From Macrostomum lignano (lineage: Eukaryota), in the NCBI GenBank assembly GCA_002269645.1, contig NIVC01001359.1, positions 1 through 64,000 on the forward strand: a stretch of 64,000 bases of DNA. The letters are read 5' to 3'. A program made the position numbers and the translations under genes. The notes beneath the pieces were generated by a model. That model made no database searches and was not told the origin of the DNA. It saw only the letters and a program-made list of their open reading frames with translations. Below are positions 6,001 through 60,978 of this stretch, piece after piece; position 1 is the stretch's first letter; each line of letters opens with the position of its first letter.

Positions 6001-8597
6001 AGATGACGCAGAGCCCGCTACTCTCAGCATCTCTAACTAGCCCTGTCGCTGTCAATATATAGAATTAAATGGAGAGCTTAGAAATGACACTCAATGGGGC
6101 TGATATACACAGGTGCAAAGATGACGCAGAGCCCGCTACTCTCAGCATCTCTAACTAGCCCTGTCGCTGTCAATATATAGAATTAAATGGAGAGCTTAGA
6201 AATGACACTCAATGGGGCTGATATACACAGGTGCAAAGATGACGCAGAGCCCGCTACTCTCAGCATCTCTAACTAGCCCTGTCGCTGTCAATATATAGAA
6301 TTAAATGGAGAGCTTAGAAATGACACTCAATGGGGCTGATATACACAGGTGCAAAGATGACGCAGAGCCCGCTACTCTCAGCATCTCTAACTAGCCCTGT
6401 CGCTGTCAATATATAGAATTAAATGGAGAGCTTAGAAATGACACTCAATGGGGCTGATATACACAGGTGCAAAGATGACGCAGAGCCCGCTACTCTCAGC
6501 ATCTCTAACTAGCCCTGTCGCTGTCAATATATAGAATTAAATGGAGAGCTTAGAAATGACACTCAATGGGGCTGATATACACAGGTGCAAAGATGACGCA
6601 GAGCCCGCTACTCTCAGCATCTCTAACTAGCCCTGTCGCTGTCAATATATAGAATTAAATGGAGAGCTTAGAAATGACACTCAATGGGGCTGATATACAC
6701 AGGTGCAAAGATGACGCAGAGCCCGCTACTCTCAGCATCTCTAACTAGCCCTGTCGCTGTCAATATATAGAATTAAATGGAGAGCTTAGAAATGACACTC
6801 AATGGGGCTGATATACACAGGTGCAAAGATGACGCAGAGCCCGCTACTCTCAGCATCTCTAACTAGCCCTGTCGCTGTCAATATATAGAATTAAATGGAG
6901 AGCTTAGAAATGACACTCAATGGGGCTGATATACACAGGTGCAAAGATGACGCAGAGCCCGCTACTCTCAGCATCTCTAACTAGCCCTGTCGCTGTCAAT
7001 ATATAGAATTAAATGGAGAGCTTAGAAATGACACTCAATGGGGCTGATATACACAGGTGCAAAGATGACGCAGAGCCCGCTACTCTCAGCATCTCTAACT
7101 AGCCCTGTCGCTGTCAATATATAGAATTAAATGGAGAGCTTAGAAATGACACTCAATGGGGCTGATATACACAGGTGCAAAGATGACGCAGAGCCCGCTA
7201 CTCTCAGCATCTCTAACTAGCCCTGTCGCTGTCAATATATAGAATTAAATGGAGAGCTTAGAAATGACACTCAATGGGGCTGATATACACAGGTGCAAAG
7301 ATGACGCAGAGCCCGCTACTCTCAGCATCTCTAACTAGCCCTGTCGCTGTCAATATATAGAATTAAATGGAGAGCTTAGAAATGACACTCAATGGGGCTG
7401 ATATACACAGGTGCAAAGATGACGCAGAGCCCGCTACTCTCAGCATCTCTAACTAGCCCTGTCGCTGTCAATATATAGAATTAAATGGAGAGCTTAGAAA
7501 TGACACTCAATGGGGCTGATATACACAGGTGCAAAGATGACGCAGAGCCCGCTACTCTCAGCATCTCTAACTAGCCCTGTCGCTGTCAATATATAGAATT
7601 AAATGGAGAGCTTAGAAATGACACTCAATGGGGCTGATATACACAGGTGCAAAGATGACGCAGAGCCCGCTACTCTCAGCATCTCTAACTAGCCCTGTCG
7701 CTGTCAATATATAGAATTAAATGGAGAGCTTAGAAATGACACTCAATGGGGCTGATATACACAGGTGCAAAGATGACGCAGAGCCCGCTACTCTCAGCAT
7801 CTCTAACTAGCCCTGTCGCTGTCAATATATAGAATTAAATGGAGAGCTTAGAAATGACACTCAATGGGGCTGATATACACAGGTGCAAAGATGACGCAGA
7901 GCCCGCTACTCTCAGCATCTCTAACTAGCCCTGTCGCTGTCAATATATAGAATTAAATGGAGAGCTTAGAAATGACACTCAATGGGGCTGATATACACAG
8001 GTGCAAAGATGACGCAGAGCCCGCTACACTCAGCATCTCTAACTAGCCCTGTCGCTGTCAATATATAGAATTAAATGGAGAGCTTAGAAATGACACTCAA
8101 TGGGGCTGATATACACAGGTGCAAAGATGACGCAGAGCCCGCTACTCTCAGCATCTCTAACTAGCCCTGTCGCTGTCAATATATAGAATTAAATGGAGAG
8201 CTTAGAAATGACACTCAATGGGGCTGATATACACAGGTGCAAAGATGACGCAGAGCCCGCTACTCTCAGCATCTCTAACTAGCCCTGTCGCTGTCAATAT
8301 ATAGAATTAAATGGAGAGCTTAGAAATGACACTCAATGGGGCTGATATACACAGGTGCAAAGATGACGCAGAGCCCGCTACTCTCAGCATCTCTAACTAG
8401 CCCTGTCGCTGTCAATATATAGAATTAAATGGAGAGCTTAGAAATGACACTCAATGGGGCTGATATACACAGGTGCAAAGATGACGCAGAGCCCGCTACT
8501 CTCAGCATCTCTAACTAGCCCTGTCGCTGTCAATATATAGAATTAAATGGAGAGCTTAGAAATGACACTCAATGGGGCTGATATACGCAGGTGCAAA
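1..8597. repeat. 118-bp tandem satellite, ~73 copies, begins before the window
   Basis: Unit gctactctcagcatctctaactagccctgtcgctgtcaatatatagaattaaatggagagcttagaaatgacactcaatggggctgatatacacaggtgcaaagatgacgcagagccc; period measured 601->719 = 118. Small indels only in the first ~560 bp; the array ends at ...gcaggtgcaaa (8597). Confidence 0.99.
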
Positions 8598-9164: not shown

Positions 9165-12100
9165 CAGTTAGCTAGTTAGTCAGTCAGTCAGTCAGTTAGT
9201 TAGTCAGTTAGTTGTTAGTTAGTTAGTAAGTGAGTTAATTATTATATTAAAGCAGTATAAAGCTTAAACACGAGTATTATTCAGCGGCCTCGACTTGCTT
9301 AAAACGGTTCTTTTTGTAACACTTCATTTCAGCCAAAGCGGCGGTGGATGAAGACCAGACCAAAGTGCACTGGCTGGTTACTAATGTTCGAACCGGACGG
9401 AATCAGCGCATGTGTCTGCCTCACGATTTAGGCGATCCAGGTTGGGACCATTTTTTCTAAAATCCCAGCTTAGCGGGATTTTATTCCCGAATCCACAGTA
9501 TAAAATCCCAAATCCCTATTCTAGAATCCCAAATCGCCATTCAAGCATCCAAAATCCCTATTCTAGAATACCAGATCCCTGTTCTAGAATCCTAAATCTT
9601 TGTTCTAGAATCCCAAATCCCCATTCTAGAATCCTAAATCCCTGTTCTAGAATCCCAAATCCCCATTCTAGCATCGCAAATCCGCATTCTAGATCCCAAA
9701 ACCCCATTCTCGAATCAGATCCCAAAACCCCATTCTCGAATCAGATCCCAAAACCCCATTCTCGAATCAGATCCCAAAACCCCGTTCTCGAATCAGATCC
9801 CAAAACCCCATTCTCGAATTAGATCCCAAAACCCCATTCTAGAATCCTAAATCCCCATTCTAGCATCGCAAATCCGCATTCTAGATCCCAAAACCCCATT
9901 CTCGAATCAGATCCCAAAACCCCATTCTCGAATCAGATCCCAAAACCCCGTTCTCGAATCAGATCCCAAATCATCATTCTAGAATCCCAAATCCCCATTC
10001 TAGAATCACAGATTCCCATTCTAGAATCGCAGATCCCTATTCTAGAATCCTAAATCCCCATTCTAGAATCACAGATTCCCATTCTAGAATCGCAGATCCC
10101 TATTCTAGAATCCCAAATCCCTGTTCTGGAATCCCAAATCCCCATTTTCATTTATTCCGGATATTGGAATAAATTCCTCATTCTCATTTACTCCAACCCT
10201 GCGTGCAGAGGACGAGACATTCATCCGAGTCAACAGCTACATCATGATGTGCAGCGACGATTGGCGCGATTTGAATCCCAAATTTGTACTTAGCGTCTAC
10301 CGGGATTGGAAGCTTCTGCCCGAGCACAATACCGAGTATTTGGCCGATATGATGCCCATTGTTGAGGGCCTGATGCGACGCTGCCTACAGTGGGACACTG
10401 ACAATGATGGATTGGTTGAGAATACCGGTAAGTGATCGAGACTAAGAACCAGCGAGTTACCTGGGTAAACAGCAGGAGTAACTATACTCCCATTTATATA
10501 GGTAGATTCCTCGCCATCTTCCTTATAACCCATCCTGAATGAGCATATCCGAACTCTGCAATCACAATCCCATCCAAATCCTTATTCTCATGCTCAAGCA
10601 CAACTTCTAAAACTTGCCCTAAAATACCTTAAATCCCCATCATAGAATCCTAGAATCTTTAAAATCCCAGAATGTTACTCTGGAATCCAACAATCCCACC
10701 CTAAAATCTCAGGATCTCACCCTAACGTTTCAGGATCTCGCCCTAGAATTTCAGAATCTCATCCTACAATCCCAGAATCATCTCACCGTAGAATCTCAGA
10801 ATCATCTCACCCTAGAATCCCAGAATCTCACCCTAAAATCCCAGAATAATCTCACCGGTACCCTAGAATCCCAGAATCTCACCCTAAAATCTCAGAATCT
10901 CCCCAAAATCCCAGAATGTCACTCTAAAATCCAAGAATAATCTCACCCTAGGATCTGAGATCCCAGAATCTCACCCTAGAATCCCAGAATCCCAGAATCT
11001 CGCCCTAGAATCCCAGAATCATCTCACCGGTACCCCAGAATCCCAGAATCTCACCTATAATCTCAGAATCTCACCCTATAACCCCAGAATCCATTTCTCC
11101 TTTCTTACAAATCAATATACCCCCATCAAGGCTACGCCGATCAGACCTACGACGCCTGGCCAATGACGGGCGTGTCGGCCTACTGCGCCGGCCTCTGGTT
11201 GGCCGCCCTGCGAGCCACTGCCGAAATGTCAGCTGTCGCCTCTGCTGACAGAGCCAGCGCCAACGAATGGCGCCAATTAGCGGATAAAGCTCGGACCAGC
11301 TACCTGGATAAGCTGTGGACTGGCCAGCAGTTCCGCTTCGATACTGGCGGCCGATTTAACGACACGGTCATGTCCGACCAGCTGTTCGGCTATTGGATGC
11401 TTAAAACTTCCCAGCAAGATCAGGCTGCCACAGTTGGCGAGCAAGATCCGCTACTGCCGGAACAGGCTGTCCGGGTTACTATGGAAACTGTCTACAGGTG
11501 CAACTGTCTGGCTCAGGTGATGCTTTGATTTGTCTGGATTCATTTAAGTATTTGCTGCGCATGTTTTTATAATCTCTGCCATATCCCCTCCCTTCTTCAC
11601 CTCTCCCCTCCGCCCTCTCCCTCTCTCCGCCCTCTACCTCTCTCTGCCCTCTCCCCTCTCCGCCCTCTCCCCTCTCCGCCCCCTTCCCTCTCCGCCCCCT
11701 TCCCTCTCCGCCCCCTTCCCTCTCCGCCCTCTCCCCTCTTCGCCCTCTCCCCTCTTCGCCCTTTCCCCTCTCCGCCCCCTCCCCTCTCCGCCCTCTCCTT
11801 TTCCACCCTCTCCCCTCCGCCCTCTCCCCTCTCCGCCCTCTCCTTTTCCACCCTCTCCCCTCCGCCCTCTCCCCTCTCCGCCCTCTCCCCTCTCCGCCCT
11901 CTCCCCTCTCCGCCCCCTCCCCTCTCCGTCCTCTCTCTTTTCCACCCTCTCCCCTCCGCCCTCTCCCCTCTCCGCCCTCTCCCCTCTCCGCCCTCTCCCC
12001 ATATTCCTCCCCCTCGCCCCCCGTCTTTTCTTCTCTCTCTGTGTGCCCCTCACGTGAGTGACAACTGGAGTCCTAGAATACCTCAAAGTTCCAGATCCAC

Positions 12101-16884: not shown

Positions 16885-19876
16885 ATGCAGCCTCCATCGG
16901 TGCCATCAGTGCTAGCGGCTGGTGCTTTGGCGGTGCCGCTGGCTTTGGTCTTTTCGCGACTATTCTTCGAATCTAGCGTTGCTTGGGGCGTTAAACTGTT
17001 GCTAACCGGTCTATTGACTGTTTCTATCCTGTTGCTGGCCAAATTTGCCTGGCGTCTGATATCAGCCTATCGTACCAAGCGCAAGACTAAGAAAGAGCAA
17101 TTAGAGAAGAAGGCAAGGCTATGGAATAAATTGAATAGTCTAAGCGGACCAGTGGCCAATTCTAAAACTTTGTGCCTGGAAGAATACGAGGATTTGAAAA
17201 ATCGAATGCAAAGTGGAGCTTTGGCGCCTATTGATGTTCTGGAGGCCTTTCAGGTAAGCGATTAGATTCTAAAACCTTATGAATCCATACACTGCCCTCG
17301 TTTGCCCCCCCCCCTAGTGGACCTACACTGCCCTCGTTTGCCCCCCCCCTAGTGGACCTACACTGCCCTCATTTGCCCCCCCCTAGTGGACCTACACTGC
17401 CCTCGTTTGCCCCCCCCCTAGTGGACCTACACTGCCCTCGTTTGCCCCCCCTAGTGGACCTACACTGCCCTCATTTGCCCCCCCCCCTAGTGGACCTACA
17501 CTGCCCTCATTTGCCCCCCCCCCCAAGTGGACCTACACTGCCCTAATTTGCCCCCCCCCGAAGTGGACCTACACTGCCCTAATTTGACCCCCCCCAAGTG
17601 GACCTCATTTGACCCCCTGGTGACATACGTTGCCTTCATTTGACCCCCCTAGTGGCATAAATTGCCCTCATTGGACCCCCCTAGTGGCATAAATTGCCCT
17701 CATGTGACCCCCCTGGTGACATACGTTGCCTTCATTTGACCCCCCTAGTGGCATAAATTGCCCTCATTGGACCCCCCTAGTGGCATAAATTGCCCTCATT
17801 GGACCCCCCTAGTGGCATAAATTGCCCTCATTGGACCCCCCTAGTGGCATAAATTGCCCTCATTTGACCTCCCTAGTAACACAAATTGACCTCATTTTAC
17901 CCCCCCAAGTGGACCTACACTGCCCTCATTTGACCCCCCTCATTAGTAATACCCTGATTCGACCCCCTGTCTGACCCCTCACGCAATTGCTTTCATGACT
18001 ACCCTAAACCATCAGGCTCGCACTCTGATGCTAGATCAGAAAGGCAAAGCGGCCAAGGTCAAAGAAGTTGTTTACGATGCCGACGTTCAAGCCCTGATGC
18101 TGGAGGGCGGCCGCGCTAGCGAGGTGCTGCTGCCAGCCGCCGCGTTCTATTACAACGCGGCTCTGATGCCGTTTGAGGACAAAGACGAGGATGGAGATCC
18201 TTGTCAAAAAGATCACCCTGTGGTGGCTGCTCTTCGCTCCGAGGGCGCCATAGATATTGCTCTGGTGGACAAAGACCTCACTCAGGTGAGAGAATTGTAT
18301 GTTATTTGTCTTTTCATGTTCGAAATTTTTCTTTTGCTATTGTGTGGGTTGCCCGTTCTAAAATTCAGATGGTTACTGTTTTCCCTGGGTGTCTGTAAAG
18401 GGTTGCCTGTTCTCATAAAGTGTGTCTGTAAGGGGCTGCCTGTTCTCATAAAGTGTGTCTGTAAGGGGCTGCCTGTTCTCATAAAGTGTGTCTGTAAGGG
18501 GCTGCCTGTTCTCATAAAGTGTGTCTGTAAGGGGTTGCCTGTTCTCATAAAGTGTGTCTGTAAGGAGTTGCCTGTTCTCATAAAGTGTGTCTGTAAGCGG
18601 TTGCCTGTTCTCATAAAGTGTGTCTGTAAGCGGTTGCCTGTTCTCATAAAGTGTGTCTGTAAGGGGTTGCCTGTTCTCATAAAGTGTGTCTGTAAGGGGT
18701 TGCCTGTTCTCATAAAGTGTGTCTGTAAGCGGTTGCCTGTTCTCATAAAGTGTGTCTGTAAGGGGCTGCCTGTTCTCATAAAGTGTGTCTGTAAGGGGCT
18801 GCCTGTTCTCATAAAGTGTGTCTGTAAGGGGCTGCCTGTTCTCATAAAGTGTGTCTGTAAGGGGCTGCCTGTTCTCATAAAGTGTGTCTGCAAGGGGCTG
18901 CCTGTTCTCATATAGTGTGTCTGTAAGGGGCTGCCTGTTCTCATATAGTGTGTCTGTAAGGGGCTGCCTGTTCTCATAAAGTGTGTCTGCAAGGGGCTGC
19001 CTCTTCTCATAAAGTGTGTCTGCAAGGGGCTGCCTCTTCTCATAAAGTGTGTCTGCAAGGGGCTGCCTGTTCTCATAAAGTGTGTCTGCAAGGGACTGCC
19101 TGTGTCTTTAAATCAGGGACTCCGGGTTGATTTTCTGTTAAGACCCCAAATCCCCAAAAGCAACAACCGCTGCCGCCGCACTCCTAATCCGCGCCTTGCC
19201 CCAGGTGAGCGGCCTTCTCCTCAACCACGGCGCCCTGTTCTTCGCTGGCCAGTATTCGACCTGCAACCTCGGCCAGGTGCTGCGTGCCATCGCCAGTAAG
19301 CCGATCTGCGCCACCCTGCTTCGACGCGACCAACCCGACGGTAAATTCCTAGCCATCCTGGCCAGTCAGTCTCGTCTGCCTTCGCTGGCCGCTGCCGCCG
19401 TCACGCCGGGACTTCGCGATCACCTGCTGACTCCGCCGTCGTCGCCAAGTGGCAGCCAGCCGCCGTCGCCGCGTCGCATCGGCTTCCTGTTTGAGCACCA
19501 GCGCCGATCGCAAGCCGACGGCCGACTTCCACCTGGCGAGGACAGCGTCGCCCAGCTGTTGTCACCGGCCTCCGGCTCGGCCACTCTGGTTCGCGATGTC
19601 GATTTTGCTCGACTATTATCGGCATCGAAATCGGCCAATAGTAAGTCGGAAGTTCGAGTCGCAGCTGAGGCTATCCTAGCTGAGAATTCGTTAGATGGAA
19701 TCGCTTTAGTTGCTGGGCAAGACTGCCGGCTGGCTGAGCAGTTGGCCGGCTTCATGGATTTGTCTGTGTTCCACCTGACTGAGCAGCTGGCTGAGCTGTA
19801 CCTGTGCCATCCTCACGACAGGCTTCGATCCGGGCTCACCATTGCTCAGGCATTTGGCTCGGCTATCCGACTGTGA
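16885..19876 (+). CDS. Highly divergent FAAH/amidase-signature-like membrane protein, probably catalytically inactive
   Basis: Phase-0 exons 16885..17253, 18016..18285, 19205..19876 (start of exon 3 uncertain); ~436 aa. N-terminal hydrophobic segment, then LKNRMQSGALAPIDVLEAF (cf. FAAH LVQKLHSRELAPEAVLFTY), KDHPVVAALRSEGA (cf. CDSVVVHVLKLQGA), ENSLDGIALV (cf. ALDLDVVLTP). Alignment by eye. Confidence 0.7.
17290..17945. repeat. ~33-bp minisatellite in amidase-like intron 1
   Basis: gtggacctacactgccctcatttgcccccccta with variable C runs. Confidence 0.9.
18385..19100. repeat. 33-bp minisatellite in amidase-like intron 2
   Basis: aaggggctgcctgttctcataaagtgtgtctgt; translates as repeated KGLPVLIKCVC. 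Confidence 0.95.
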
Positions 19877-19964
19877 ACTTGGGGGGCAGAGGTTGGCACA
19901 CTTTTTATTTAAAGGGCCAGATAGAGAATCTAGCGCGTGACTGCGGCCCAGAGGAGGGGAGAGA

Positions 19965-20585
19965 TGAAAAGAGAAGGGAGAAGAGAAGAGAGAGGAGAAG
20001 AGATAGGAGAGAGGAGAGGGGACAAGTGACAAAGGAGAGAGGCGAAGGAAGAGGAGAGAAGGGAGAGGTGAGAAGAGAGAGGACAAGTGAGGGATAGGAG
20101 AAGAGAGAGGACAAGTGAGGGATAAGAGAAGAGAGAGGACAAGTGAGGGATAGGAGAAGAGAGAGGACAAGTGAGGGATAGAAGAAGAGAGAGGACAAGT
20201 GAGGGATAGGAGAAGAGAGAGGACAAGTGAGGGATAGGAGAAGAGAGAGGACAAGTGAGGGATAGGAGAAGAGAGAGGACAAGTGAGGGATAGGAGAAGA
20301 GAGAGGACAAGTGAGGGATAGAAGAAGAGAGAGGACAAGTGAGGGATAGAAGAAGAGAGAGGACAAGTGAGGGATAGGAGAAGAGAGAGGACAAGTGAGG
20401 GATAGAAGAAGAGAGAGGACAAGTGAGGGATAGGAGAAGAGAGAGGACAAGTGAGGGATAGGAGAAGAGAGAGGACAAGTGAGGGATAGGAGAAGAGAGA
20501 GGACAAGTGAGGGATAGGAGAAGAGAGAGGACAAGTGAGGGATAGGAGAAGAGAGAGGACAAGTGAGGGATAGGAGAAGAGAGAA
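19965..20585. repeat. 28-bp polypurine minisatellite
   Basis: aagagagaggacaagtgagggataggag, period 20101->20129. Confidence 0.93.
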
Positions 20586-20639
20586 GGGCTCGGGTACCGT
20601 TTTTATCGGGTAAAGTCAAGGCCGATTCGCTTATAAACC

Positions 20640-21255
20640 CCACATCAGAAATCGCCCATAAATCCCACACCAAAAATCGCTCATAGACTCCACATCAGAA
20701 ATCACCCAAAGACCCCACAACAAAAATCGCCCATAGACTCCACACGAGAAATCGCCCATAGACTCCACATCAGAAATCGCCCATAGACTCCACATCAGAA
20801 ATCGCCCATAGACTCCACATCAGAAATCGCCCATAGACCCCACATCAGAAATCGCCCATAGACTCCACATCAGAAATCGCCCATAGACTCCACATCAGAA
20901 ATCGCCCATGGACTCTACACCAGAAATCGCCCATAGACTCCACACGAGAAATCGCCCATAGACTCCACACCAGAAATCGCCCATAGACTCCACACCAGAA
21001 ATCGCCCATAGACCCCACATCAGAAATCGCCCATAGACCCCACATCAGAAATCGCCCATGGACTCTACACCAGAAATCGCCCATAGACTCCACACCAGAA
21101 ATCGCGCATAGACTCCACACTAGAAATCGCCCATAGACCCCACACCAGAAATCGCGCATAGACTCCACACTAGAAATCGCCCATGGACTCCACACTAGAA
21201 ATCGCCCATGGACTTCACACGAGAAATCGCCCATAGACTCCACACCAGAAATCGC
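20640..21255. repeat. 25-bp minisatellite
   Basis: gactccacatcagaaatcgcccata, period 20761->20786. Confidence 0.93.
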
Positions 21256-22236
21256 CAGTGACTAAACATTATAAACATAATAAATTAGCATTAACAGTTT
21301 GTTTTAATTAGAAATTCATAAAGTTTAATCAGACAACCATATTTAAATACCTTTTTTTAAACTGTTATGTTTCCTGTAAACGGAATAATGTGATTAAAAG
21401 TAGGGAATCAACATCAACTTGCCAAAATGTAAATTTTGACGTGCTTTTTTATTTTAAGTTTTCGATCTGATTTAATTTTTCATTCATTTTTTGGATTGCC
21501 TGTTTATTACTCCTGCGCTGTGCCTTGAACTGGTGTTCCGTTAACTAGTTTATACTATTTGTAAACTAGCTTTATTACAGTTTTATTTAAATTTTCTATA
21601 TATTATACGTTTAAGCTAAATTTGTTTATTAACTTATTCTACTTATTGTTCTACTTATGTCAGTAGTGTGCTACGAGTATTTCTAAACTTTGTTTTCCTT
21701 TTTCGTAACTGTTTTCTGCTAATTTTTAAAATACTTTTCATATTTATTCACTCGCTGGTGGTATGTGTAGTTGGCTATTGCCGATATGTTGTGTAAACAA
21801 CTTTGTTGAGTTGGCTGCTATTTTGAATTGTATTGTATGCAAATTATATATATATACTTGCATATTGCTACTCGTATAATATACGTTTTATTTTAAAAAC
21901 ATTTTTTAGTTTAACGAACTTTTGTATACGCTCAAACGTTTATATATTGCTGGCTATTAGTTTTTTATATGCCTTAAATAAAAGCCATTTAAATGCTCAT
22001 GCAAGCATATCTTTAACTTCTTTTTTTAGTAGAATTTAGCACCAATATTTAACTGTGTGTGTACGATTTTCTCTGCTTCAAGTAGATTAATCAGATCATT
22101 TTTAATTAATAATAATGAATTAATTGAAGCCACGAATTGCATATTTAGCAGTTTTTTCTTCACGTATGCTTATTACCGTCTTTTACATCCCTCTGTTTAC
22201 TCACTACTGATAATAGTCTTCTATCAGTAGTATTAA

Positions 22237-22310
22237 GGGCCATAACCAAGTGGTCTAGCGCGGCGCTCTGATGTGCCAGCGGCCCAGGCTCGATTCCAAG
22301 TGCAGTCACA
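22237..22310 (+). mobile_element. tRNA-derived SINE head or tRNA pseudogene
   Basis: A-box-like TAACCAAGTGG (22243-22253) and B-box-like GGCTCGATTCC (22287-22297) at tRNA-like spacing; no acceptor stem can be formed. Confidence 0.45.
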
Positions 22311-22324
22311 TTAATTTTGGGGCT

Positions 22325-22905
22325 AAATGTAGACAAATACAGACCCTAACTGACAGACAACAGACCCTAACTGACAGACAAATACAGACCCTAACTGACA
22401 GACAAATACAGACCCTAACTGACAGACAAATACAGACCCTAACTGACAGGTAAATACAGACCCTAACTGACAGTCAAATACAGACCCTAACTGACAAATA
22501 CAGACCCTGACAGGCAAATACAGACCCTAACTGACAGACAACAGACCCTAACTGACAGACAACAGACCCTAACTGACAGACAACAGACCCTAACTGACAG
22601 ACAAATACAGACCTAACTGACAGGTAAATACAGACCCTAGCTGACAGGTAAATACAGACCCTAACTGACAGTCAAATGCAGACCCTAACTGACAGACAAA
22701 TACAGACCCTGACTGACAGGTAAATACAGACCCTAACTGACAGACGAATGCAGACCCTAACTGACAGACAAATACAGACCCTAACTGACAGACAAATACA
22801 GACCCTGACAGACAAATACAGACCCTAACTGACAAATACAGACCCTAACTGACAAATACAGACCCTGACAGGCAAATACAGGCCCTAACTGACAGACAAA
22901 TACAG
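22325..22905. repeat. ~24-bp minisatellite
   Basis: aatacagaccctaactgacagaca with 20-24 bp variants. Confidence 0.93.
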
Positions 22906-22958
22906 AAAGAAAAGAAAAATACCAATCAGGCAACTCAAGGCGCAATTTTGCTTTCCAG

Positions 22959-23690
22959 GAAACGCCAGAAGCGGCCGAAGCGGCCAGAAAATACCCCAGC
23001 CTGGTGCTGAACATCAGGTCGGATATTGCATCAGGCGCCCCATCAAAAGATGCAGCACCGGCTTCTAAGAACAATTTGGCAGCCTCCTGTGCTTCGGAGC
23101 AGCAGCAGAAAAGGTGCCTACAGTTTGAAGCTGAGCAAAAATTGCAATTGGAGAAGCAGCTTGAACGGCAGCGCCGAAAGCAGCAACGCAGCATGCGTCA
23201 GCATCTTGCATGGCAACTAGACCATCGATTTAGTTCGCCTAACTGCGGCCCGTTGCACTTTCTCTGGCGCTGCGCCAATGTCTCACTTGAAGGTGAAAGC
23301 CAGCCACCCAGAGTAGCGGTGTACACCAGAGCTATGAACCAGATCGATGCCATCATACGGGGCAGGCTGGTGTCATTCGATAGGCATGTAAATCTTGTAC
23401 TGACAGACGCTGTGGAGACTCGCCTAGTTAACCTGGACACCGGCTGCGTCAGAGAGCTGCAACGCAAGCAGAGGCGCAACGCTAAACGCGCCGTCGCTAG
23501 ATCGGCTAGAGAAGTTGTCAGGAAAAAGAAAATCGCCGATTTCGTAGAACCCAGTGATGATTGCGAAGCGGTTGGAGATGACGGTAGTGGCGGCGCTAGT
23601 TCGAGTCGGTGTCGGGCTCAAGTTGAGCACTCTACCTTGGGTCAGGTTCTGCTGAGAGGATCTTGCGTTGTCTTGGTGCGATTGGCCTGA
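22959..23690 (+). CDS. LSM11: LSm11-like U7 snRNP protein (split Sm fold)
   Basis: Open frame from acceptor ttttgctttccag|GAA (22959) to TGA 23690. GPLHFLWRC, RVAVYTR, GRLVSFDRHVNLVLTDAVET (Sm1), a long basic/acidic insert, then LGQVLLRGSCVVLVRLA-stop (Sm2) follow the LSm11 layout (GPLxxLxRC...GFLVAFDKFWNMALTDV...QIFIRGENVLLV). Confidence 0.85.
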   Translation, partial: ETPEAAEAARKYPSLVLNIRSDIASGAPSKDAAPASKNNLAASCASEQQQKRCLQFEAEQKLQLEKQLERQRRKQQRSMRQHLAWQLDHRFSSPNCGPLHFLWRCANVSLEGESQPPRVAVYTRAMNQIDAIIRGRLVSFDRHVNLVLTDAVETRLVNLDTGCVRELQRKQRRNAKRAVARSAREVVRKKKIADFVEPSDDCEAVGDDGSGGASSSRCRAQVEHSTLGQVLLRGSCVVLVRLA

Positions 23691-23970: not shown

Positions 23971-24382
23971 CGGCTGGATTAACAGATTCAAATCTGATAT
24001 TATTTAACGATAATTACATAATAGTCCGAAAAATCAGGCTTAACTATTTCCAATGCGATTAAGTATTTAGAATGCATTTGCTGTATGCTTTTATACAGTA
24101 CAATAGCAATATGCCAGTTTTCTAAACCTTGCAGTGAGGCATTTAAGAACTCATTTTAATAATTGCTTCCTATAGGTAGGGTTCACATGCTTTTCTGACT
24201 ACTTATACCTTTTTTAAACAGTGAGAAAATTTTTTTCGGTGCTATGATTTTCTATATGTTCTCTTTGTACTTGAATAATAAAACGATTTTCTGAAACATA
24301 TATTTTCCTATGACGAGAGTTTCCTACGCTGTCTTTTTTTCATTTGAGTTTTGAGTGCGAGTTATAAGACGAAGATACAATT

Positions 24383-24448: not shown

Positions 24449-24572
24449 GCATTAGCTGGGGTAATTGAGGGTGTGTGGCGACCCCCCCCCCCCCCCCCAG
24501 TCCTTGGACTGAACAGCCGCCAGCACTTTTGACATAATGTGATAGCAATTAAAACTCAAATTTGCTGCCACA

Positions 24573-27500
24573 ATGACGTCACTAGCCAGCGTTGGTTCGC
24601 GCAGAACAGCTCAAGCCTACTCAGCCGCTATGCTGTTAAGCGCCTGCGGCGACGCCATGGGCTACAAGAATGGCGAATGGGAGTTCTGCTTCGATGGGTC
24701 CAGATTGCACGCCGCGGTTGAAAGAATGGGTGGATTGAATAACTTAAATATTACTCTGCCACATTTTCGAGTTAGCGACGATACGGTTATGCATATGGCC
24801 ACGGCTAAGGGTGAGAATGTGGCCTTGTAGACCGCTTTACCGGACAGATACTTTCAATATACTCTACTGAAGTAGAATACAGTGTTAGTTAGTTAGTCAG
24901 TCAGTTAGCTAGTCAGTAGTTAGTTAGTTAGTTAGTTAGTTGGTCAGTTAGTTCGTTAGTCAGTTAGTTAGTCAGTTAGCTAGTTCTTTTTGACGATTTT
25001 TATTCTCCTATTATTTATATTTAATGGCAGCTTTAATTGCCAAGGCGACCGCCCCGGACGAGGAGCAGCTGTACCTGCAGCTGGCTAGGGAGTACTGCGA
25101 CTGCATGAACTATATGGCTGGTCGGAGCCCAGGTGAGTTGGTTTTTTGTATTAGTTTCGCAATTTTTTTAATTACAAGTATTGTGGCTTTTACTTACAGC
25201 TTTAAAATGTTTCTAAGAATTATAGCTTTCACCCATTTCTTAGAAACGTAGCTTTTGCCTATTACTAGGAATCATATTTAATCCTGTTCCAGGAATCTTA
25301 TTTTATTCGTTTTTACGAGTTCTAGTCAATCAGTTTTCAACTACGCTTTAACTATGCTAATTCCACCCCTTTTTAAACAACTATATATCTCACACATTTA
25401 AAAAATCTTTCACCCATTTCTAAGAATCCTATTTCACCGTTTCTAAGAATTGTATTTCACTATTTTCAAAAATTATATTTTATTTTTTCCAAAATCATAT
25501 TTTACCATTTCTAGGAATCCTCTTTCACCCATTTGTAAGAATCCTATTTCACCCATTTCTATGAATCCTATTTCACCATTTCTAAGAATCCTGTTTCACC
25601 CATTTCTATGAATCCTATTTCACCCATTTCTAAGAATCCTATTTCACCATTTCTAAGAATACTATTTCACCCATTTCTATGAATCCTATTTCACCATTTC
25701 CAAGAATCCTGTTTCAACCATTTCTAAGAATCCTGTTTCACCCATTTCTATGAATCCTATTTCACCATTTCTAAGAATACTATTTCACCCATTTCTATGA
25801 ATCCTATTTCACCATTTCCAAGAATCCTGTTTCACCCATTTCTAAGAATCCTATTTCACCCATTTCTTAGAATCCTATTTCACCATTTCTAAGAATCCTA
25901 TTTCACCATTTCTAAGAATCCTATTTCACCCATTTCTTAGAATCCTATTTCACCCATTTCTAAGAATACTATTTCACCCATTTCTTTGAATCCTATTTCA
26001 CCATTTCTAAGAATCCTATTTCACCCATTTCTATGAATCCTATTTCACCCATTTCTATGAATCCTATTTCACCCATTTCTAAGAATCCTTTTTCACCATT
26101 TCTAAGAATCCTATTTCACCCATTTCTAAGAATCCTATTTCACCCATTTCTAAGAATCCTATTTCACCCATTTCTAAGAATTCTATTTCACCCATTTCTA
26201 AGAATCCTATTTCACCCATTTCTAAGAATTCTATTTCACCCATTTCTAAGAATCCTATTTCACCCATTTCTAAGAATTCTATTTCACCCATTTCTAAGAA
26301 TTCTATTCACAATTTTAAGAATCCTTTTTCACCGGATTGTAAGAATTCACTCCGTTTCTAAGAATCTTATTCAATCAATTCGTTTTTTACAATCCGACTC
26401 AATCCATTTCTTAGAAAACTTTTCACCCGTTTCTAAGAATGATCGCTCACGAACTGATTATCTAGCTGCATAATTATATTTTAACACGCGCAGGTGACTG
26501 CACCTCATTCAGCTGCAACGATCTCATAGACACTGGCGGTTACAAAATCGAATTTAATGATCGGTAATTGATTTAATATTTTAAATATCGTTGCCTGATT
26601 TGAAAATTTTAGTTTATCTATAAAGCTAATAAAAACGATTGATTAAAAATCTTGAAGAGGCGGCGGCTGCGGTGGTGCCATGCGGTCCATGTGCATCGGC
26701 ATGGTGTTCTGGCAGCCGCACCAGCTCAAGCGGCTGGTGTCCACCGCTGTGGAGGCTGGCAGGATGACCCACAACCACCCCACTGGCTACCTGGGCAGCC
26801 TGGCTTCTGCCTACTTCGCCTCGCTCGCTTTGCAAGGCCAGCCGTTGGAGAAATGGGGAGCTGAACTGCTGCAAACCGCACTGCCGGCCGCGTGGAAGTA
26901 CGTGGAGGAGACTGGTGAGTCTGTGGCTGCTGCCGGCCTCCCAGATCCTCAGTTGCTGCTGCCGGCCTCCCAGATCCTCAGTTGCTGCTGCCGGCCTCCC
27001 AGATCCTCAGTTGCTGCTGCCGGCCTCCCAGATCCTCAGTTGCTGCTGCCGGCCTCCCAGATCCTCAGTTGCTGCTGCTGGCCTCCCAGATCCTCAGTTG
27101 CTGCTGCCGGCCTCCCAGATCCTCAGTTGCTGCTGCCGGCCTCCCAGATCCTCAGTTGCTGCTGCCGGCCTCCCAGATCCTCAGTTGCTGCTGCCGGCCT
27201 GCCAGATCCTCAGTTGCTGCTGCCGGCCTCCCAGATCCTCAGTTGCTGCTGCCGGCCTCCCAGATCCTCAGTTGCTGCTGCCGGCCTCCCAGATCCTCAG
27301 TTGCTGCTGCTGGCCTCCCAGATCCTCAGTTGCTGCTGCCGGCCTCCCAGATCCTCAGTTGCTGCTGCCGGCCTCCCAGATCCTCAGTTGCTGCTGCCGG
27401 CCTCCCAGATCCTCAGTTGCTGCTGCCGGCCTCCCAGATCCTCAGTTGCTGCTGCCGGCCTCCCAGATCCTCAGTTGCTGCTGCCGGCCTCCCAGATCCT

Positions 27501-28519
27501 CAGTTGCTGCTGCCGGCCTCCCAGATCCTCAGTTGCTGCTGCCGGCCTCCCAGATCCTCAGTTGCTGCTGCCGGCCTCCCAGATCCTCAGTTGCTGGGCC
27601 ACCAGCCTCCCAGATCCTCAGTTGCTGGGCCAGCCTCCCAGATCCTCAGTTGCCGTACAAAGCCCCTTCGTTCTCCCCGCAGGCCGCGACCTCGCTGAGA
27701 ACAAGCGTCACTGGCCCTACTTCTCCACCGCCTGGGCCAACTACCTTCGCCAACGCGGCCTCCTTGACGGCCGGGGGCCTGCGCAGTTCAAGCAGCCCTA
27801 CGGCCCGGCCGAGAGGGACGCCTTCTACAAGTCTTTGTCCTACAGCGGCTGGGGCGGCGCCTCCGGTCACGACGCCCCGATGATCGCCTACGATGCCCTG
27901 CTGTTCGCCTGCAGCGCTGGGAGTAGCGGTGGTGGCGACGAGGGCAGCGGTGAGCAGTGGCTGCGACTGTGTGAAGCTGCCGTGCTGCACGGCGGAGACA
28001 ATGACTCTACGGGGGCCATCGCCTGCTGCCTGTATGGCCTGCTGAATGGCGGGCTGGAGGGAGTGCCCGATGGCCATCACAGCGTGAGTGCTGGCTGGAG
28101 TAGAGAGATAGATTAGCAATCCATTAGGATTGGGGAGATAGATTAGCAATCCATTAGGATTGGAAAGATAGATTAGCAATCCAATCTGACTGGAGAGATA
28201 TATTAGCAATCCATTAGGATTGGGGAGATAGATTAGCAATCCATTCTGATTGGGGAGATAGATTAGCAATCCATTCTGATTGGGGAGATAGATTAGCAAT
28301 CCATTATAATTGAAGAGATAGATTAGCAATCCATTCTGATTGGAGAGATAGATTAGCAATCCATTCTGATTGAAGAGATAGATAAGCAATCCATTCTGAT
28401 TGGGGAGATTGAAATTAAATAAAAAAATCGATATAAACTTTTGCTTTCAGGGTTTGGAGTTCCGCTCTGAATTGGCCTCACTGGGCGAGCAGCTGCATCA
28501 GGTGTCGGAGCAGCTGTAA
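24573..28519 (+). CDS. ADPRH: ADP-ribosylarginine hydrolase (ARH1), 378 aa
   Basis: Phase-consistent exons 24573..24810, 25031..25132, 26494..26563, 26658..26914, 27683..28083, 28451..28519 (total 1137 nt). Motifs [75 protein letters not shown]; metal-binding acidic residues are intact. Confidence 0.96.
24885..24985. repeat. (TAGT)n microsatellite in ADPRH intron 1
   Basis: Direct reading. Confidence 0.9.
25400..26380. repeat. 22-24 bp minisatellite in ADPRH intron 2
   Basis: atttctaagaatcctatttcaccc with deletion variants. Confidence 0.93.
26925..27655. repeat. 29-bp minisatellite filling ADPRH intron 4
   Basis: gccggcctcccagatcctcagttgctgct; the last units are 28-bp gggccagcctcccagatcctcagttgct. 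Confidence 0.95.
28105..28410. repeat. 30-bp minisatellite in ADPRH intron 5
   Basis: gagatagattagcaatccattctgattggg. Confidence 0.93.
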
Positions 28520-29534
28520 TTAATTTTTTTTGTTATTTGTAAATCCCGCTGGAAAACACGCTGGATTTTGCGTCAACAATTTTTTTCCATGGCTTTTGCC
28601 TATTCCAGAACAGATTTGTATGCATTGTAGTATATATTTAATTGCCATGTGTACCTTAATGAATCCATGGTTTTTAATGATAATGATAGCCATGTATAAT
28701 TTTTTGATGAGATTTTGTTTTAAAAAACTATTTATTCCGATTTTTATCTGTTTTGTATTTGCCTACTTTTCTTGCGCTGTTTATCCAGTCGAGTAACTGA
28801 ATAACTCGGTATATTACACAATTTATTATAAGTTACTTAATAAACTGCTATTTTTCTATCTGCTTACATTTCTATTAAAACTGGATCTACTTGGATTTTA
28901 GATTCTTTCTTGAATTTACATGTATATACTTACTGTGTTCAAAGCTCAAATGGGATTTGAATGGTCAGTGTTAAAAACACAGATATCAGCGGTCAGTACA
29001 TGAATGACTAAATAATGCAAAAATGCGCTCATCTAGTATCAAGTCTTTCTTCAGTAGTATAATTAGCGTTTTCCGCCTTCGTATTTGTAAAATTCAACAT
29101 TCACATTTACAATATTGCATGTCCAACTAATTTCCACCACATCCGATGCATCCACCCTCATTTCCGCCCCCCCCCATCGGATGCAGCCACCCTCATATCC
29201 GCGTGTTAAAAAAGGCAACTAAACATATTTGAAATTTTGCACTTTTTCCGGAATGATTAAAAATGTTTTATTACATATATTTGAGCCAAAAAACTACAGC
29301 ACTTTTTACATAAAGTATTATTAATATATGTAACCTATTTTAGCTTTAAGAAACTATAAACGAAAAACGGAGAACATGAGAAATTATGAAGCAATACAAT
29401 TAAGCTCTGATTTTTATACTGGGAAATACGCATGGAATGGTTTGACGCTAAGTGCAGTAGAAATTAATACAACATCTAGTGCGTTACCAGTACTAATAGC
29501 AACTTGTAAAATGTTCATGGGGCTCTTGGCTGTT

Positions 29535-31040
29535 GGCCCAGTAACTGACACTCTGGGAGGCTGGCCCAGCAACTGACACTCTGGGAGGCTGGCCCAGCAA
29601 CTGACACTCTGGGAGGCTGGCCCAGCAACTGACACTCTGGGAGGCTGGCCCAGCAACTGACACTCTGGGAGGCTGGCCCAGCAACTGACACTCTGGGAGG
29701 CTCGCCCAGCAACTGCAACACTCTGGGAGGCTAGCCCAGCAACTGACACTCTGGGAGGCTGGCCCAGCAACTGCAACACTCTGGGAGGCTAGCCCAGCAA
29801 CTGCAACACTCTGGGAGGCTAGCCCAGCAACTGCAACACTCTGGGAGGCTAGCCCAGCAACTGCAACACTCTGGGAGGCTGGCCCAGCAACTGACACTCT
29901 GGGAGGCTGGCCCAGCAACTGACACTCTGGGAGGCTGGCCCAGCAACTGCAACACTCTGGGAGGCTGGCCCAGCAACTGACACTCTGGGAGGCTGTCCCA
30001 GCAACTGACACTGGGAGGCTGGCCCAGCAACTGACACTCTGGGAGGCTGGCCCAGCAACTGACACTCTGAGAGGCTGGCCCAGCAACTGACACTCTGGGA
30101 GGCTGGCCCAGCAACTGACACTCTGGGAGGCTGGCCCAGCAACTGACACTCTGGGAGGCTGTCCCAGCAACTGACACTCTGGGAGGCTGGCCCAGCAACT
30201 GACACTCTGGGAGGCTCGCCCAGCAACTGCAACACTCTGGGAGGCTAGCCCAGCAACTGACACTCTGGGAGGCTGGCCCAGCAACTGCAACACTCTGGGA
30301 GGCTAGCCCAGCAACTGCAACACTCTGGGAGGCTAGCCCAGCAACTGCAACACTCTGGGAGGCTAGCCCAGCAACTGCAACACTCTGGGAGGCTGGCCCA
30401 GCAACTGACACTCTGGGAGGCTGGCCCAGCAACTGACACTCTGGGAGGCTGGCCCAGCAACTGCAACACTCTGGGAGGCTGGCCCAGCAACTGACACTCT
30501 GGGAGGCTGTCCCAGCAACTGACACTCTGGGAGGCTGGCCCAGCAACTGACACTCTGGGAGGCTGTCCCAGCAACTGACACTCTGGGAGGCTGGCCCAGC
30601 AACTGACACTCTGAGAGGCTGGCCCAGCAACTGACACTCTGGGAGGCTGGCCCAGCAACTGACACTCTGGGAGGCTGGCCCAGCAACTGACACTCTGGGA
30701 GGCTGGCCCAGCAACTGACACTCTGGGAGGCTGGCCCAGCAACTGACACTCTGGGAGGCTAGCCCAGCAACTGCAACACTCTGGGAGGCTGGCCCAGCAA
30801 CTGACACTCTGGGAGGCTGGCCCAGCAACTGCAACACTCTGGGAGGCTGGCCCAGCAACTGACACTCTGGGAGGCTGGCCCAGCAACTGACACTCTGGGA
30901 GGCTGTCCCAGCAACTGACACTCTGGGAGGCTAGCCCAGCAACTGCAACACTCTGGGAGGCTGGCCCAGCAATTGGGGACCTGGGTGGCTAGCTGGCCCA
31001 GCAACTGACACTCTGGGAGAACTGACGATCTGGAAGGCTG
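29535..31040. repeat. 28/31-bp minisatellite between the convergent 3' ends of ADPRH and centlein
   Basis: ctgggaggctggcccagcaactgacact with ctgcaacact variants. Confidence 0.95.
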
Positions 31041-60399: not shown

Positions 60400-60900
60400 G
60401 CTCAGTTGCATGTCGTGCTCCAAAGCAACGCCCTGTCGGACCAGTTGAAGACCCGACTGTTCCAGGCAAGCGGTGCTCCTCTACAACGCCGAGACATGGA
60501 CCAAACGGATGGAGGTCCTGGAGCGAAAACTGGACGCGGTGCACTCCAGCCTGCTACGCGCTACCTTCAACATCCACCGTCACGCCGAGCACGTCACCAA
60601 CCAGGCCCTCTGTCAACGGGCCAAGCTGGGCCCTCCCAGCATGACCCTGCGACAGCGACGCCTGAAGCTGGCGGGTCGCGTCATCCGTGCCGCGTCAACT
60701 GCCCAGAACTCCTTCCGGCGGGGCAGGCCCGGACCCGGAGGTTCGTCGACTGTGTTGACGGAAGGTGCCAAGTCGCCTGATCAGGCCAACGGTGTTGCCT
60801 TTATTAGAGACTGTGCGACTAAGCCTGTTTTTTTGACATTGTCCCCCCTTTTCCTGACCACTTTGTGGTCGGAGGACCTTGTATCTATTGTATTGTATTG
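60400..60900 (+). mobile_element. 5'-truncated, frameshifted non-LTR retrotransposon (RTE-like) 3' fragment
   Basis: LQSNALSDQLKTRLFQA / VLLYNAETWT...KLDAVHSSLLR...RQRRLKLAGRVIR...RRGRP is the typical post-RT region of RTE-clade elements; short (TATTG)n tail at ~60886-60900. Confidence 0.8.
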
Positions 60901-60978
60901 TCACCGAACTAGCTGCAGCCTCCAGCTTCATGCTTCCGGAAAAACTGTAGCTCAATGGAATTTAGCCTGATACATGTA

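What the first reader, a model, noticed from the sequence alone, without database searches (positions are those of the whole stretch)
22946..23030. LSm11 has no upstream ATG but a phase-0 acceptor that yields METPEAAE... if a spliced-leader AUG is added
Seen: ttttgctttccag|GAA ACG CCA GAA at 22959 opens a 243-codon frame whose first in-frame ATG is ~78 codons downstream (23193); I found no candidate upstream coding exon, only repeats and AT-rich DNA back to the previous gene's stop. Knowledge: flatworm spliced leaders end in AUG, which can serve as initiator Met. Inference: SL trans-splicing supplies the start codon, giving M-ETPEAAEAARKYPSLVLNIRSD, whose LNIRSD recalls the LDVSSD N-terminal motif of LSm11. 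Translation of a core snRNP subunit would then depend on trans-splicing.
Basis: partly seen in the sequence, partly recalled or inferred. Interest (0 to 1): 0.7.

Follow-up and report, generated by a model that had tools for sequence, protein, structure and literature searches.

The report
LSm11-like flatworm gene lacking own ATG
A Macrostomum lignano gene for an Sm-like (probably LSm11) protein opens at a splice acceptor with no start codon of its own, so it most likely borrows the AUG at the end of the trans-spliced leader, a trick already known in flatworms and not confirmed here with RNA data.

Summary
A pyrimidine-rich acceptor, ttttgctttccag|GAA at 22958/22959, opens a 243-codon frame (stop TGA 23688-23690). 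An in-frame stop lies 22 codons upstream, and the first in-frame ATG is codon 79 (23193).

The window is Macrostomum lignano: a GH116 exon is 98% identical to a UniRef M. lignano protein. Its single 35-nt spliced leader (SL) ends in ATG.

- The acceptor fits the published trans-acceptor motif [T/C]TNCAG.
- G+C jumps from 0.37 to 0.54 at 22959.
- The ATG-less 78 codons score as coding in this frame only.
- An out-of-frame ATG at 23050 would hinder scanning to M79.
- The 3.1 kb upstream holds only nine weak ATG...|GT exon candidates, none with a consensus donor.

No transcript evidence could be reached. The protein is absent from every protein collection searched.

The LSm11 identity is probable but unproven. 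The architecture fits, but similarity to LSm3 is as high, and the full N-terminal LSm11 motif is absent.

Use of the flatworm SL AUG as initiator methionine has been known since 2006. At best this is a new, unverified example of a known mechanism.

The parts
22331..22906 (.). 24-bp tandem repeat array (about 25 copies, unit AGACAAATACAGACCCTAACTGAC) just upstream; presumed outron or intergenic DNA
   Evidence: stops in all three + frames
22890..22892 (+). In-frame TGA that closes the reading frame upstream of the acceptor
22946..22958 (+). Pyrimidine tract plus AG (ttttgctttccAG). Candidate 3' splice (trans-splice) acceptor; TTCCAG fits [T/C]TNCAG
   Evidence: motif from PMC8629364
22959..23192 (+). 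78 codons with no ATG, coding-like (ETPEAAEAARKYPSLVLNIRSD...QQRS): the proposed N-terminal extension that needs an external start codon
23050..23052 (+). Out-of-frame ATG (context caaaagATGc) opening a 56-codon ORF that runs past 23193. A scanning ribosome would meet it before M79
23193..23195 (+). First in-frame genomic ATG (codon 79); the alternative start, giving a 165-aa protein
22959..23690 (+). Single-exon open frame of 243 codons plus TGA stop: Sm-like protein, probable LSm11
23250..23420 (+). Pre-Sm helix (PLHFLWRC) and Sm1 motif (RVAVYTRAMNQIDAIIRGRLVSFDRHVNLVLTDAVET)
   Evidence: Pfam LSM E=2.3e-10; BLASTP to human LSm11 residues 155-204; hhalign
23421..23636 (+). Insertion of about 70 residues, basic then acidic, between Sm1 and Sm2 (split Sm domain)
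   Evidence: read from the translation; Pfam LSM hit in two stretches
23637..23687 (+). Sm2 motif at the very C-terminus (LGQVLLRGSCVVLVRLA*). Human LSm11 ends INQIFIRGENVLLVHLAQ*
24277..24282 (+). First AATAAA after the stop; candidate poly(A) signal about 220 nt before the next gene's likely acceptor (24499/24500)

Best explanation
The locus is a single-exon M. lignano gene for a split-Sm protein with a long N-terminal extension, most likely the U7-snRNP protein LSm11. Its pre-mRNA is transcribed through the repeat-rich upstream DNA, either from its own promoter or as a downstream member of a co-directional gene cluster. The outron is removed by SL trans-splicing at the TTCCAG acceptor (22958/22959). 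Because the 35-nt M. lignano SL ends in AUG and the acceptor is in phase 0, the junction reads ...UUGCAUG|GAAACG. The SL AUG, the first AUG on the mRNA, starts a 244-residue protein, METPEAAEAARKYPSLVLNIRSD.... Shown here: the sequence anatomy, the species, the coding-like character of the ATG-less stretch, and the lack of a good upstream exon. Inferred: that trans-splicing actually happens at this site, that the SL AUG is used, and that the protein is LSm11.
For: Species and SL: a window exon is 98% identical to M. lignano A0A1I8H9T9. The SL ends in ATG, and [T/C]TNCAG is the top trans-acceptor motif (PMC8629364). The SL with its terminal ATG is conserved across Macrostomum species (PMC10468722). 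Priors: 45% of conserved M. lignano genes and 85% of neoblast genes are trans-spliced. SLBP, the histone-mRNA partner factor, is flagged TRANSSPLICED and Neoblast. Anatomy: TTCCAG is the only motif-matching in-frame acceptor at the point where G+C rises from 0.37 to 0.54. There is no in-frame ATG for 78 codons. Codon score of 22959-23192 is +0.215 bit/codon in frame 0, against -0.20 and -0.26 in the other frames and at most 0.01 antisense; it exceeds 99.1% of null windows. The open frame has P about 0.04. The out-of-frame ATG at 23050, with A at -3 and a 56-codon ORF overlapping 23193, argues against leaky use of M79. Upstream 19877-22958 has only 9 phase-0 ATG...|GT candidates, against 41 +/- 12 in shuffles. 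None has GT[AG]AG, and all encode AT-rich nonsense peptides. Mechanism precedent: the SL AUG is used as initiator in Schistosoma and Echinococcus.
Against: There is no RNA evidence of any kind. The protein, with or without the added Met, is absent from the gene-position index, from the 5.8-billion-protein search, and from the exhaustive search of 1.84 billion representatives. LSM11 is not listed in the held M. lignano supplementary tables. Being in frame with the SL AUG has a 1-in-3 chance in any case. The composition of this stretch is T-poor, so open frames are not rare; one antisense frame is open too. The codon model was trained on only about 2,800 codons from this window. The -3 position of the SL AUG is U, a weak Kozak context by vertebrate standards. 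The N-terminal residues are not demonstrably conserved with LSm11.
Confidence: 0.6

Rival explanations
1. The acceptor at 22958 is a cis-splice acceptor. A short upstream exon with its own ATG, or an exon of the upstream co-directional gene, is joined to it, so the start codon is genomic.
For: The acceptor motif does not distinguish cis from trans; CAG is also the cis motif. Flatworms share acceptors extensively between cis- and trans-splicing (PMC12582326). The upstream + strand gene has consensus phase-0 donors at 17253|GTAAGC and 18285|GTGAGA that would be in frame with 22959. Two weak candidates exist: ATG 21367 (MFP|GTAAAC) and ATG 21763 (MCSWLLPICC|GTAAAC).
Against: Candidates are fewer than chance (9 against 41 +/- 12). 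None has the GT[AG]AG donor, and none looks coding. The size of the N-terminal extension is already in the LSm11 range without further exons. A fusion with the upstream gene has no support.
Confidence: 0.17
2. Translation starts at the genomic ATG 23193 (M79), giving a 165-aa Sm protein. The open frame upstream is 5' UTR that happens to lack stops.
For: It is the first genomic in-frame ATG. The open frame upstream is only modestly unlikely (P about 0.04), and the region is T-poor. Standard annotation would choose it.
Against: The frame-0 codon score of the upstream 78 codons is higher than that of the downstream part. The out-of-frame ATG at 23050, with a 56-codon overlapping ORF, precedes M79. 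M79 sits only 20 residues before the pre-Sm helix, which would delete the whole N-terminal extension that characterises LSm11. The context of ATG 23193 has a C at -3 (cgcagcATGc), neither purine.
Confidence: 0.12
3. The locus is a decaying or non-expressed duplicate that has lost its 5' exon or start codon. M. lignano is a hidden polyploid with many gene copies.
For: It is embedded between tandem repeats, has no ATG, and has no database counterpart. BUSCO duplication in M. lignano is 79% (PMC10468722).
Against: The frame is intact over 243 codons, with preserved Sm1 and Sm2 motifs and a coding-like codon score. A well-formed acceptor lies exactly at the start of the coding-like sequence.
Confidence: 0.08
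4. Initiation at a near-cognate codon within 22959-23192, for example GTG 23004 or CTG 23007.
For: In-frame GTG and CTG codons exist (one search lists the GTG-started ORF 23004..23690).
Against: Non-AUG initiation is rare and inefficient. There is no supporting context, and the organism offers a ready AUG through the SL.
Confidence: 0.03

Closest known systems
[quoted passage not shown]
   Same: The SL ends in AUG. The acceptor is in phase 0 with the main ORF. There is no usable AUG of the gene's own near the 5' end. The N-terminus would be truncated without the SL AUG.
   Different: Those cases rest on SL-bearing cDNAs and in vivo tests in Schistosoma and Echinococcus. Here only the genomic anatomy is available. 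The species is a free-living macrostomid, for which use of the SL AUG has been noted as likely (PMC10468722), but no systematic catalogue turned up in the papers I searched.
slORFs (SL-created open reading frames; slORFfinder, PMC9851317)
   Same: An ORF whose start codon is supplied by the spliced leader.
   Different: slORFs are defined from SL reads plus ribosome footprints. Neither is available here, and no flatworm footprint data were used in that study.
LSm11, the U7 snRNP-specific Sm-like protein (human, 360 aa; PDB 6V4X, 8G1U)
   Same: LSM domain; pre-Sm helix PLxxLxRC; Sm1 ...F-D-x-x-x-N-x-x-L-T-D-x-x-E-T; a long insertion between Sm1 and Sm2 containing a basic run; protein ends 3-4 residues after Sm2 (LVRLA* against LVHLAQ*); an N-terminal extension of more than 100 residues.
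   Different: Shorter (244 against 360 aa). The vertebrate-invariant N-terminal motif RLDVSSxxFDPLLALY...CFNNxAEYESF is not detectable; only PSLVLNIRSD resembles PSPRLDVSSD. Overall sequence similarity is no higher than to LSm3.
LSm3 and SmD2 (canonical Sm-ring proteins with a short loop-4 insertion)
   Same: Best raw scores for the Sm1 motif: LSm3 35.8 bits by BLASTP and 22 bits by phmmer. SmD2 shares GPLxxL and FDRH.
   Different: These are proteins of about 100-120 aa. They lack a 115-residue N-terminal extension and a 70-residue insertion, and they carry C-terminal tails after Sm2.

Membership tests
SL-trans-spliced mRNA that uses the SL AUG as initiator (flatworm class of Cheng et al. 2006) | Organism has SL trans-splicing with an SL ending in AUG | tested here: met
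   Window assigned to M. lignano; the SL sequence ends in ATG
SL-trans-spliced mRNA that uses the SL AUG as initiator (flatworm class of Cheng et al. 2006) | SL sequence found joined to the acceptor in cDNA or RNA-seq | not testable with these tools
   No M. lignano transcript data reachable. The one metagenome hit to the exon 25-mer is an unrelated GC-rich bacterial contig
SL-trans-spliced mRNA that uses the SL AUG as initiator (flatworm class of Cheng et al. 2006) | Acceptor in phase with the main ORF, with no stop between the SL AUG and the ORF | tested here: met
   Phase 0 at 22959; open to 23687
SL-trans-spliced mRNA that uses the SL AUG as initiator (flatworm class of Cheng et al. 2006) | No nearby AUG of the gene's own; the SL AUG is needed for an N-terminus matching orthologues | tested here: inconclusive
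   The first ATG of its own is 78 codons downstream (met). N-terminal correspondence to orthologues is not demonstrable
SL-trans-spliced mRNA that uses the SL AUG as initiator (flatworm class of Cheng et al. 2006) | No cis donor upstream that pairs with the acceptor | tested here: inconclusive
   No consensus-donor ATG exon in 3.1 kb, but phase-0 donors exist in the upstream gene
LSm11 (U7 snRNP) | Sm/LSM fold domain | tested here: met
   Pfam PF01423 E=2.3e-10, 40.5 bits against a cutoff of 23.4
LSm11 (U7 snRNP) | Sm1 and Sm2 separated by a long insertion; protein ends right after Sm2 | tested here: met
   About 70 residues between ...DAVET and LGQVLLRG; ends ...VVLVRLA*
LSm11 (U7 snRNP) | Long N-terminal extension before the Sm domain | tested here: inconclusive
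   About 97 residues precede the pre-Sm helix if translation starts at the SL AUG, but only about 20 if it starts at M79
LSm11 (U7 snRNP) | N-terminal FLASH-binding motif (LDVSSDxFDPLLALY; invariant in 12 vertebrates) | tested here: not met
   hhalign does not align it. The 16-residue motif gives P=0.68 against shuffles; only the 6-10-residue fragment resembles it (P about 0.02). The newer LSm11-associated Pfam family PF28412 is not in the available library
LSm11 (U7 snRNP) | Closer to LSm11 than to other Sm paralogues | tested here: inconclusive
   BLASTP: LSm3 35.8, LSm11 33.9, SmE 28.5, SmB 27.7, SmD2 25.8 bits. phmmer favours LSm3. hhalign to the LSm11 profile: prob 62%, E=7.6e-5
LSm11 (U7 snRNP) | Association with U7 snRNA and a role in histone pre-mRNA 3' processing | not testable with these tools
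   Biochemical. U7-dependent histone processing is inferred for planarians

The most novel reading that the evidence does not exclude
Production of full-length LSm11, and so assembly of a FLASH-competent U7 snRNP and histone mRNA 3' processing in proliferating neoblasts, depends obligatorily on SL trans-splicing in Macrostomum. The arrangement would be conserved across the genus and act as a regulatory coupling between trans-splicing capacity and S-phase histone supply, rather than being a neutral way of obtaining a start codon.
Probability: 0.1. Interest if true: 0.45.

Novelty: new member of a known kind. Interest (0 to 1): 0.3.

Why it matters
If confirmed, this is a clean example in a free-living, transgenesis-capable flatworm of a conserved RNA-processing factor whose start codon is not in its gene. 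Standard ORF callers and annotations miss or truncate such genes. No counterpart of this protein exists in any of the protein collections searched, which may or may not be for that reason. It also bears on reporter and transgene design in M. lignano, because genomic fragments of such genes lack an initiator. The mechanism itself has been known since 2006, so the value lies in annotation and in one more documented case, not in a new principle.

Tried and rejected
- **Transcript or annotation look-ups.** I tried the M79-started, GTG-started and Met+ETPE... products, and the M. lignano GH116 protein. None is on record.
- **Homologue searches with the 243-aa protein.** There were 0 hits among 5.8 billion clustered proteins and 0 among 1.84 billion representatives. 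No orthologue, allele or homeologue was therefore available for conservation or dN/dS tests.
- **SL RNA gene in the window.** None found.
- **Single-sequence AlphaFold2.** All-helical, pLDDT 61, pTM 0.26, unusable. No fold search was run.
- **Pfam scan for an LSm11-specific N-terminal family.** PF28412 appears in the precomputed annotations of the vertebrate LSm11 hits but is not in the available library.
- **Metagenome scan for the first 25 exon bases.** One exact hit, but it lies in a GC-rich bacterial contig with a GAAGCGGCC repeat. This is a chance match.
- **Supplementary tables of three M. lignano papers searched for LSM11/LSM10.** Absent. Only SLBP was found.
- **tRNA-like stretch at 22230-22310.** ARAGORN and Rfam find nothing.
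- **Retrocopy idea.** I considered that the DNA upstream of 22959 might be a degenerate SL left by retroposition of a trans-spliced mRNA. I rejected it on inspection: there is only scattered similarity (ACTCAA, CAATTT, TGC), no ATG, and no poly(A) remnant after the stop.
- **Alternative in-frame acceptors.** 22896 has a weak pyrimidine tract and non-coding composition. 23124 lies inside coding-like sequence. Both are less likely than 22959.

Full report
**1. What is in the sequence**

At 22946-22958 the + strand reads ttttgctttccag. It is followed by GAA ACG CCA GAA GCG.... In that frame the sequence is open from 22893, just after an in-frame TGA at 22890-22892, to a TGA at 23688-23690. Counted from 22959 this is 243 codons. 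The only in-frame ATGs are at 23193 (codon 79) and 23334.

Immediately upstream lie several features:
- a 24-bp tandem repeat array (22331-22906);
- AT-rich DNA (about 21260-22220);
- two more tandem arrays (20070-20584 and 20633-21256);
- the end of a co-directional ORF at 19876.

**2. Whose genome this is**

A GH116/DUF608 exon in the window (11163-11528) is 98% identical to UniRef A0A1I8H9T9 of Macrostomum lignano. The extreme load of tandem repeats fits that genome.

M. lignano has one 35-nt spliced leader, CGGTCTCTTACTGCGAAGACTCAATTTATTGCATG, which ends in ATG. Between 30% and 39% of its genes are trans-spliced, as are 45% of genes conserved with human and 85% of neoblast genes. The top motif at trans-splice acceptors is [T/C]TNCAG (PMC8629364; PMC5730564). 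The SL and its terminal ATG are conserved in M. cliftonense and M. hystrix (PMC10468722).

The condition 'host lacks SL trans-splicing' is thus ruled out. No SL RNA gene lies in the window itself.

**3. Is 22959 an exon start, and is the ATG-less stretch coding?**

TTCCAG fits the trans-acceptor motif. Among in-frame AG sites between the upstream stop and codon 79, only 22959 and 23124 fit it. Only 22959 sits where the composition changes, from G+C 0.37 in 22893-22958 to 0.54 afterwards. The motif occurs about 0.0025 times per nt in the window, so an in-frame match within the 22 available positions is expected about 0.06 times.

I built a codon model from about 2,800 codons of other ORFs in the window.
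- 22959-23192 scores +0.215 bit/codon in frame 0, and -0.20 and -0.26 in the other two sense frames.
- It scores at most 0.01 in antisense frames.
- This exceeds 99.1% of other 234-nt windows and frames.
- It is also higher than the score of the C-terminal part that contains the Sm domain.

Base shuffles keep 78 codons open only 3.8% of the time. The region is T-poor, however, and one antisense frame is open as well, so openness alone is weak evidence.

An out-of-frame ATG at 23050 (A at -3) opens a 56-codon ORF that runs past 23193. On an mRNA beginning at 22959, a scanning ribosome would meet it before M79.

Together these points say that the coding sequence most likely begins at or very near 22959, and not at 23193.

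**4. Is there an upstream exon with an ATG?**

I searched the 3.1 kb between the previous ORF's stop and the acceptor for ATG-started open stretches ending in phase 0 at a GT. Nine were found, against 41 +/- 12 in shuffles. None has the M. lignano donor consensus GT[AG]AG. Their peptides (MFP, MS, MCSWLLPICC..., MQIIYIYLH..., MLIT) look like translated AT-rich DNA.

It is not proof. The upstream co-directional gene has consensus phase-0 donors at 17253 and 18285 that would in principle be in frame with 22959. Flatworm acceptors are also often shared between cis- and trans-splicing (PMC12582326).

**5. What the protein is**

Pfam finds an LSM domain (E=2.3e-10), in two stretches. The architecture has these parts:
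- about 97 residues of extension;
- a pre-Sm helix, PLHFLWRC;
- Sm1 (RVAVYTRAMNQIDAIIRGRLVSFDRHVNLVLTDAVET);
- an insertion of about 70 residues with a basic run (RKQRRNAKRAVARSAREVVRKKK) followed by an acidic and Gly/Ser stretch;
- Sm2 (LGQVLLRGSCVVLVRLA) at the very C-terminus.

That is the LSm11 layout. I checked my copy of human LSm11 against PDB 8G1U chain D, and it was 360/360 identical. Human LSm11 aligns over residues 155-204 (PLGELHRC...LTDVDET) at 33.9 bits, E=2e-6. A profile of 12 vertebrate LSm11 sequences aligns over the same region at E=7.6e-5, probability 62%. Both proteins end a few residues after Sm2 (LVRLA* against LVHLAQ*).

Sequence scores do not single out LSm11, though.
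- LSm3 scores 35.8 bits by BLASTP and is the best PDB hit by phmmer.
Their phmmer scores reproduce those of the PDB search exactly: LSm3 22.0, SmB 14.3, SmE 13.6 bits.
- The vertebrate-invariant N-terminal motif RLDVSSxxFDPLLALY is not found. Only PSLVLNIRSD resembles PSPRLDVSSD, at a similar distance from the N-terminus (P about 0.015-0.02 against shuffles, chosen post hoc). The 16-residue motif gives P=0.68.

I rate 'LSm11 orthologue' at about 0.65. 'Sm-like protein with a split Sm domain' is secure. U7-dependent histone mRNA processing is inferred to operate in planarians (PMC6312358), and M. lignano SLBP is itself trans-spliced and neoblast-enriched. An LSm11 gene with this expression mode would therefore be unsurprising.

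**6. What could not be done**

No RNA evidence was reachable. Exact-product look-ups all returned nothing: M79 start, GTG start, and Met+ETPE. The protein has no relative at all in the 5.8-billion-protein search or in the exhaustive scan of 1.84 billion representatives. The M. lignano GH116 protein has no contig on record. LSM11 is not named in the held supplementary tables of the M. lignano transcriptome papers.

A metagenome scan for the first 25 exon bases hit only an unrelated GC-rich bacterial contig. Single-sequence structure prediction failed.

That no entry in these collections, the UniRef M. lignano proteins included, matches this protein is compatible with an annotation blind spot for ATG-less genes. 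It proves nothing on its own.

**7. Mechanism and alternatives**

The best-supported reading (about 0.6) is as follows. The outron is removed by SL trans-splicing at 22958/22959. The junction reads ...UUGCAUG|GAAACG. The SL AUG, as the first AUG on the mRNA, starts a 244-residue protein.

The rivals are:
- a cis-spliced upstream exon or an exon of the upstream gene (about 0.17);
- initiation at M79, yielding a 165-residue protein without the extension (about 0.12);
- a decaying duplicate in this polyploid genome (about 0.08);
- near-cognate initiation (about 0.03).

The gene sits in a co-directional run: an unknown gene at 16885-19876, then this gene, then an ADP-ribosylglycohydrolase gene from 24573. 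The first AATAAA after the stop is at 24277, about 220 nt before a C18-AG acceptor-like site at 24499/24500. This spacing fits the operon-like distances described for M. lignano, with a peak near 100 bp and a threshold of 1 kb after subtracting repeats. That raises the prior for trans-splicing in this neighbourhood.

**8. Comparison with what is known, and novelty**

All reported flatworm SLs end in AUG (with rare exceptions among individual SL-RNA gene copies), and that AUG can serve as initiator methionine. This has been known since Cheng et al. 2006.
- In S. mansoni, more than 40 cDNAs need the SL AUG (PMC9851317).
- In E. granulosus, several conserved proteins need it for a full N-terminus, and its use is conserved among Neodermata (PMC3510090).
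- For Macrostomum, the terminal ATG has been explicitly flagged as a likely translation start (PMC10468722).

This finding is at most a new, still unverified member of a known class. It points to annotation of ATG-less genes and offers a simple test case in a transgenic model, and it does not introduce a new principle. Interest 0.3.

Noticed in passing
window 1-8597: A 118-bp satellite, about 73 head-to-tail copies at 99% identity, fills the first 8.6 kb of the window.
   Followed up: partly
window 24482-24500 and 24573: A run of 18 C followed by AG lies 73 nt before the ATG of the next + strand gene (ADP-ribosylglycohydrolase, Pfam PF03747; exons at 24573-24830 and up to 28116). It looks like another (trans-)splice acceptor about 220 nt after the first AATAAA (24277) downstream of the Sm gene. 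The two genes may form an operon-like pair.
   Followed up: partly
window 26900-27700: A tandem repeat encoding (A)[28 protein letters not shown] stays open in frame within the long ORF that also carries the ADP-ribosylglycohydrolase exons. It is probably an intron, or an in-frame repeat expansion. Related repeats occur on the - strand at 29400-30900 and 44700-45600.
   Followed up: no
window 16885-19876 (+): The upstream co-directional gene has no Pfam match. Exon 1 starts with a transmembrane-like segment, and there are consensus phase-0 donors at 17253 and 18285. A 33-bp repeat at 18400-18900 carries a GTAAG at each copy.
   Followed up: partly
window 22230-22310: A tRNA-like stretch (gggccataaccaagtggtctagcgcggcgctctgatgtgccagcggcccaggctcgattcc) lies directly before the 24-bp repeat array. 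ARAGORN and Rfam do not call it. It may be a tRNA-derived SINE head.
   Followed up: partly
window 22781-23194 (-): A 137-codon ATG-started ORF runs antisense to the N-terminal extension. Its codon score is non-coding (-0.09 bit/codon), and it is probably a by-product of the T-poor sense strand.
   Followed up: yes
window 11163-11528 (+): An exon of a GH116 (GBA2-like, DUF608) glucosylceramidase gene, 98% identical to M. lignano A0A1I8H9T9. This identifies the species.
   Followed up: yes
window 60208-60970 (+): ORFs with ...LLYNAETWT... resemble the C-terminal part of a LINE-type reverse transcriptase (assignment from memory). There is only a weak Pfam DUF6238 hit (E=0.0016). Probably a transposon remnant.
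   Followed up: no
L001 1447-1471 (JGI20214J51650_10013898): An exact 25-nt match to the first exon bases occurs in a GC-rich bacterial metagenome contig, caused by a GAAGCGGCC repeat. It is a chance match and a reminder that this 5' coding sequence is of low complexity.
   Followed up: yes
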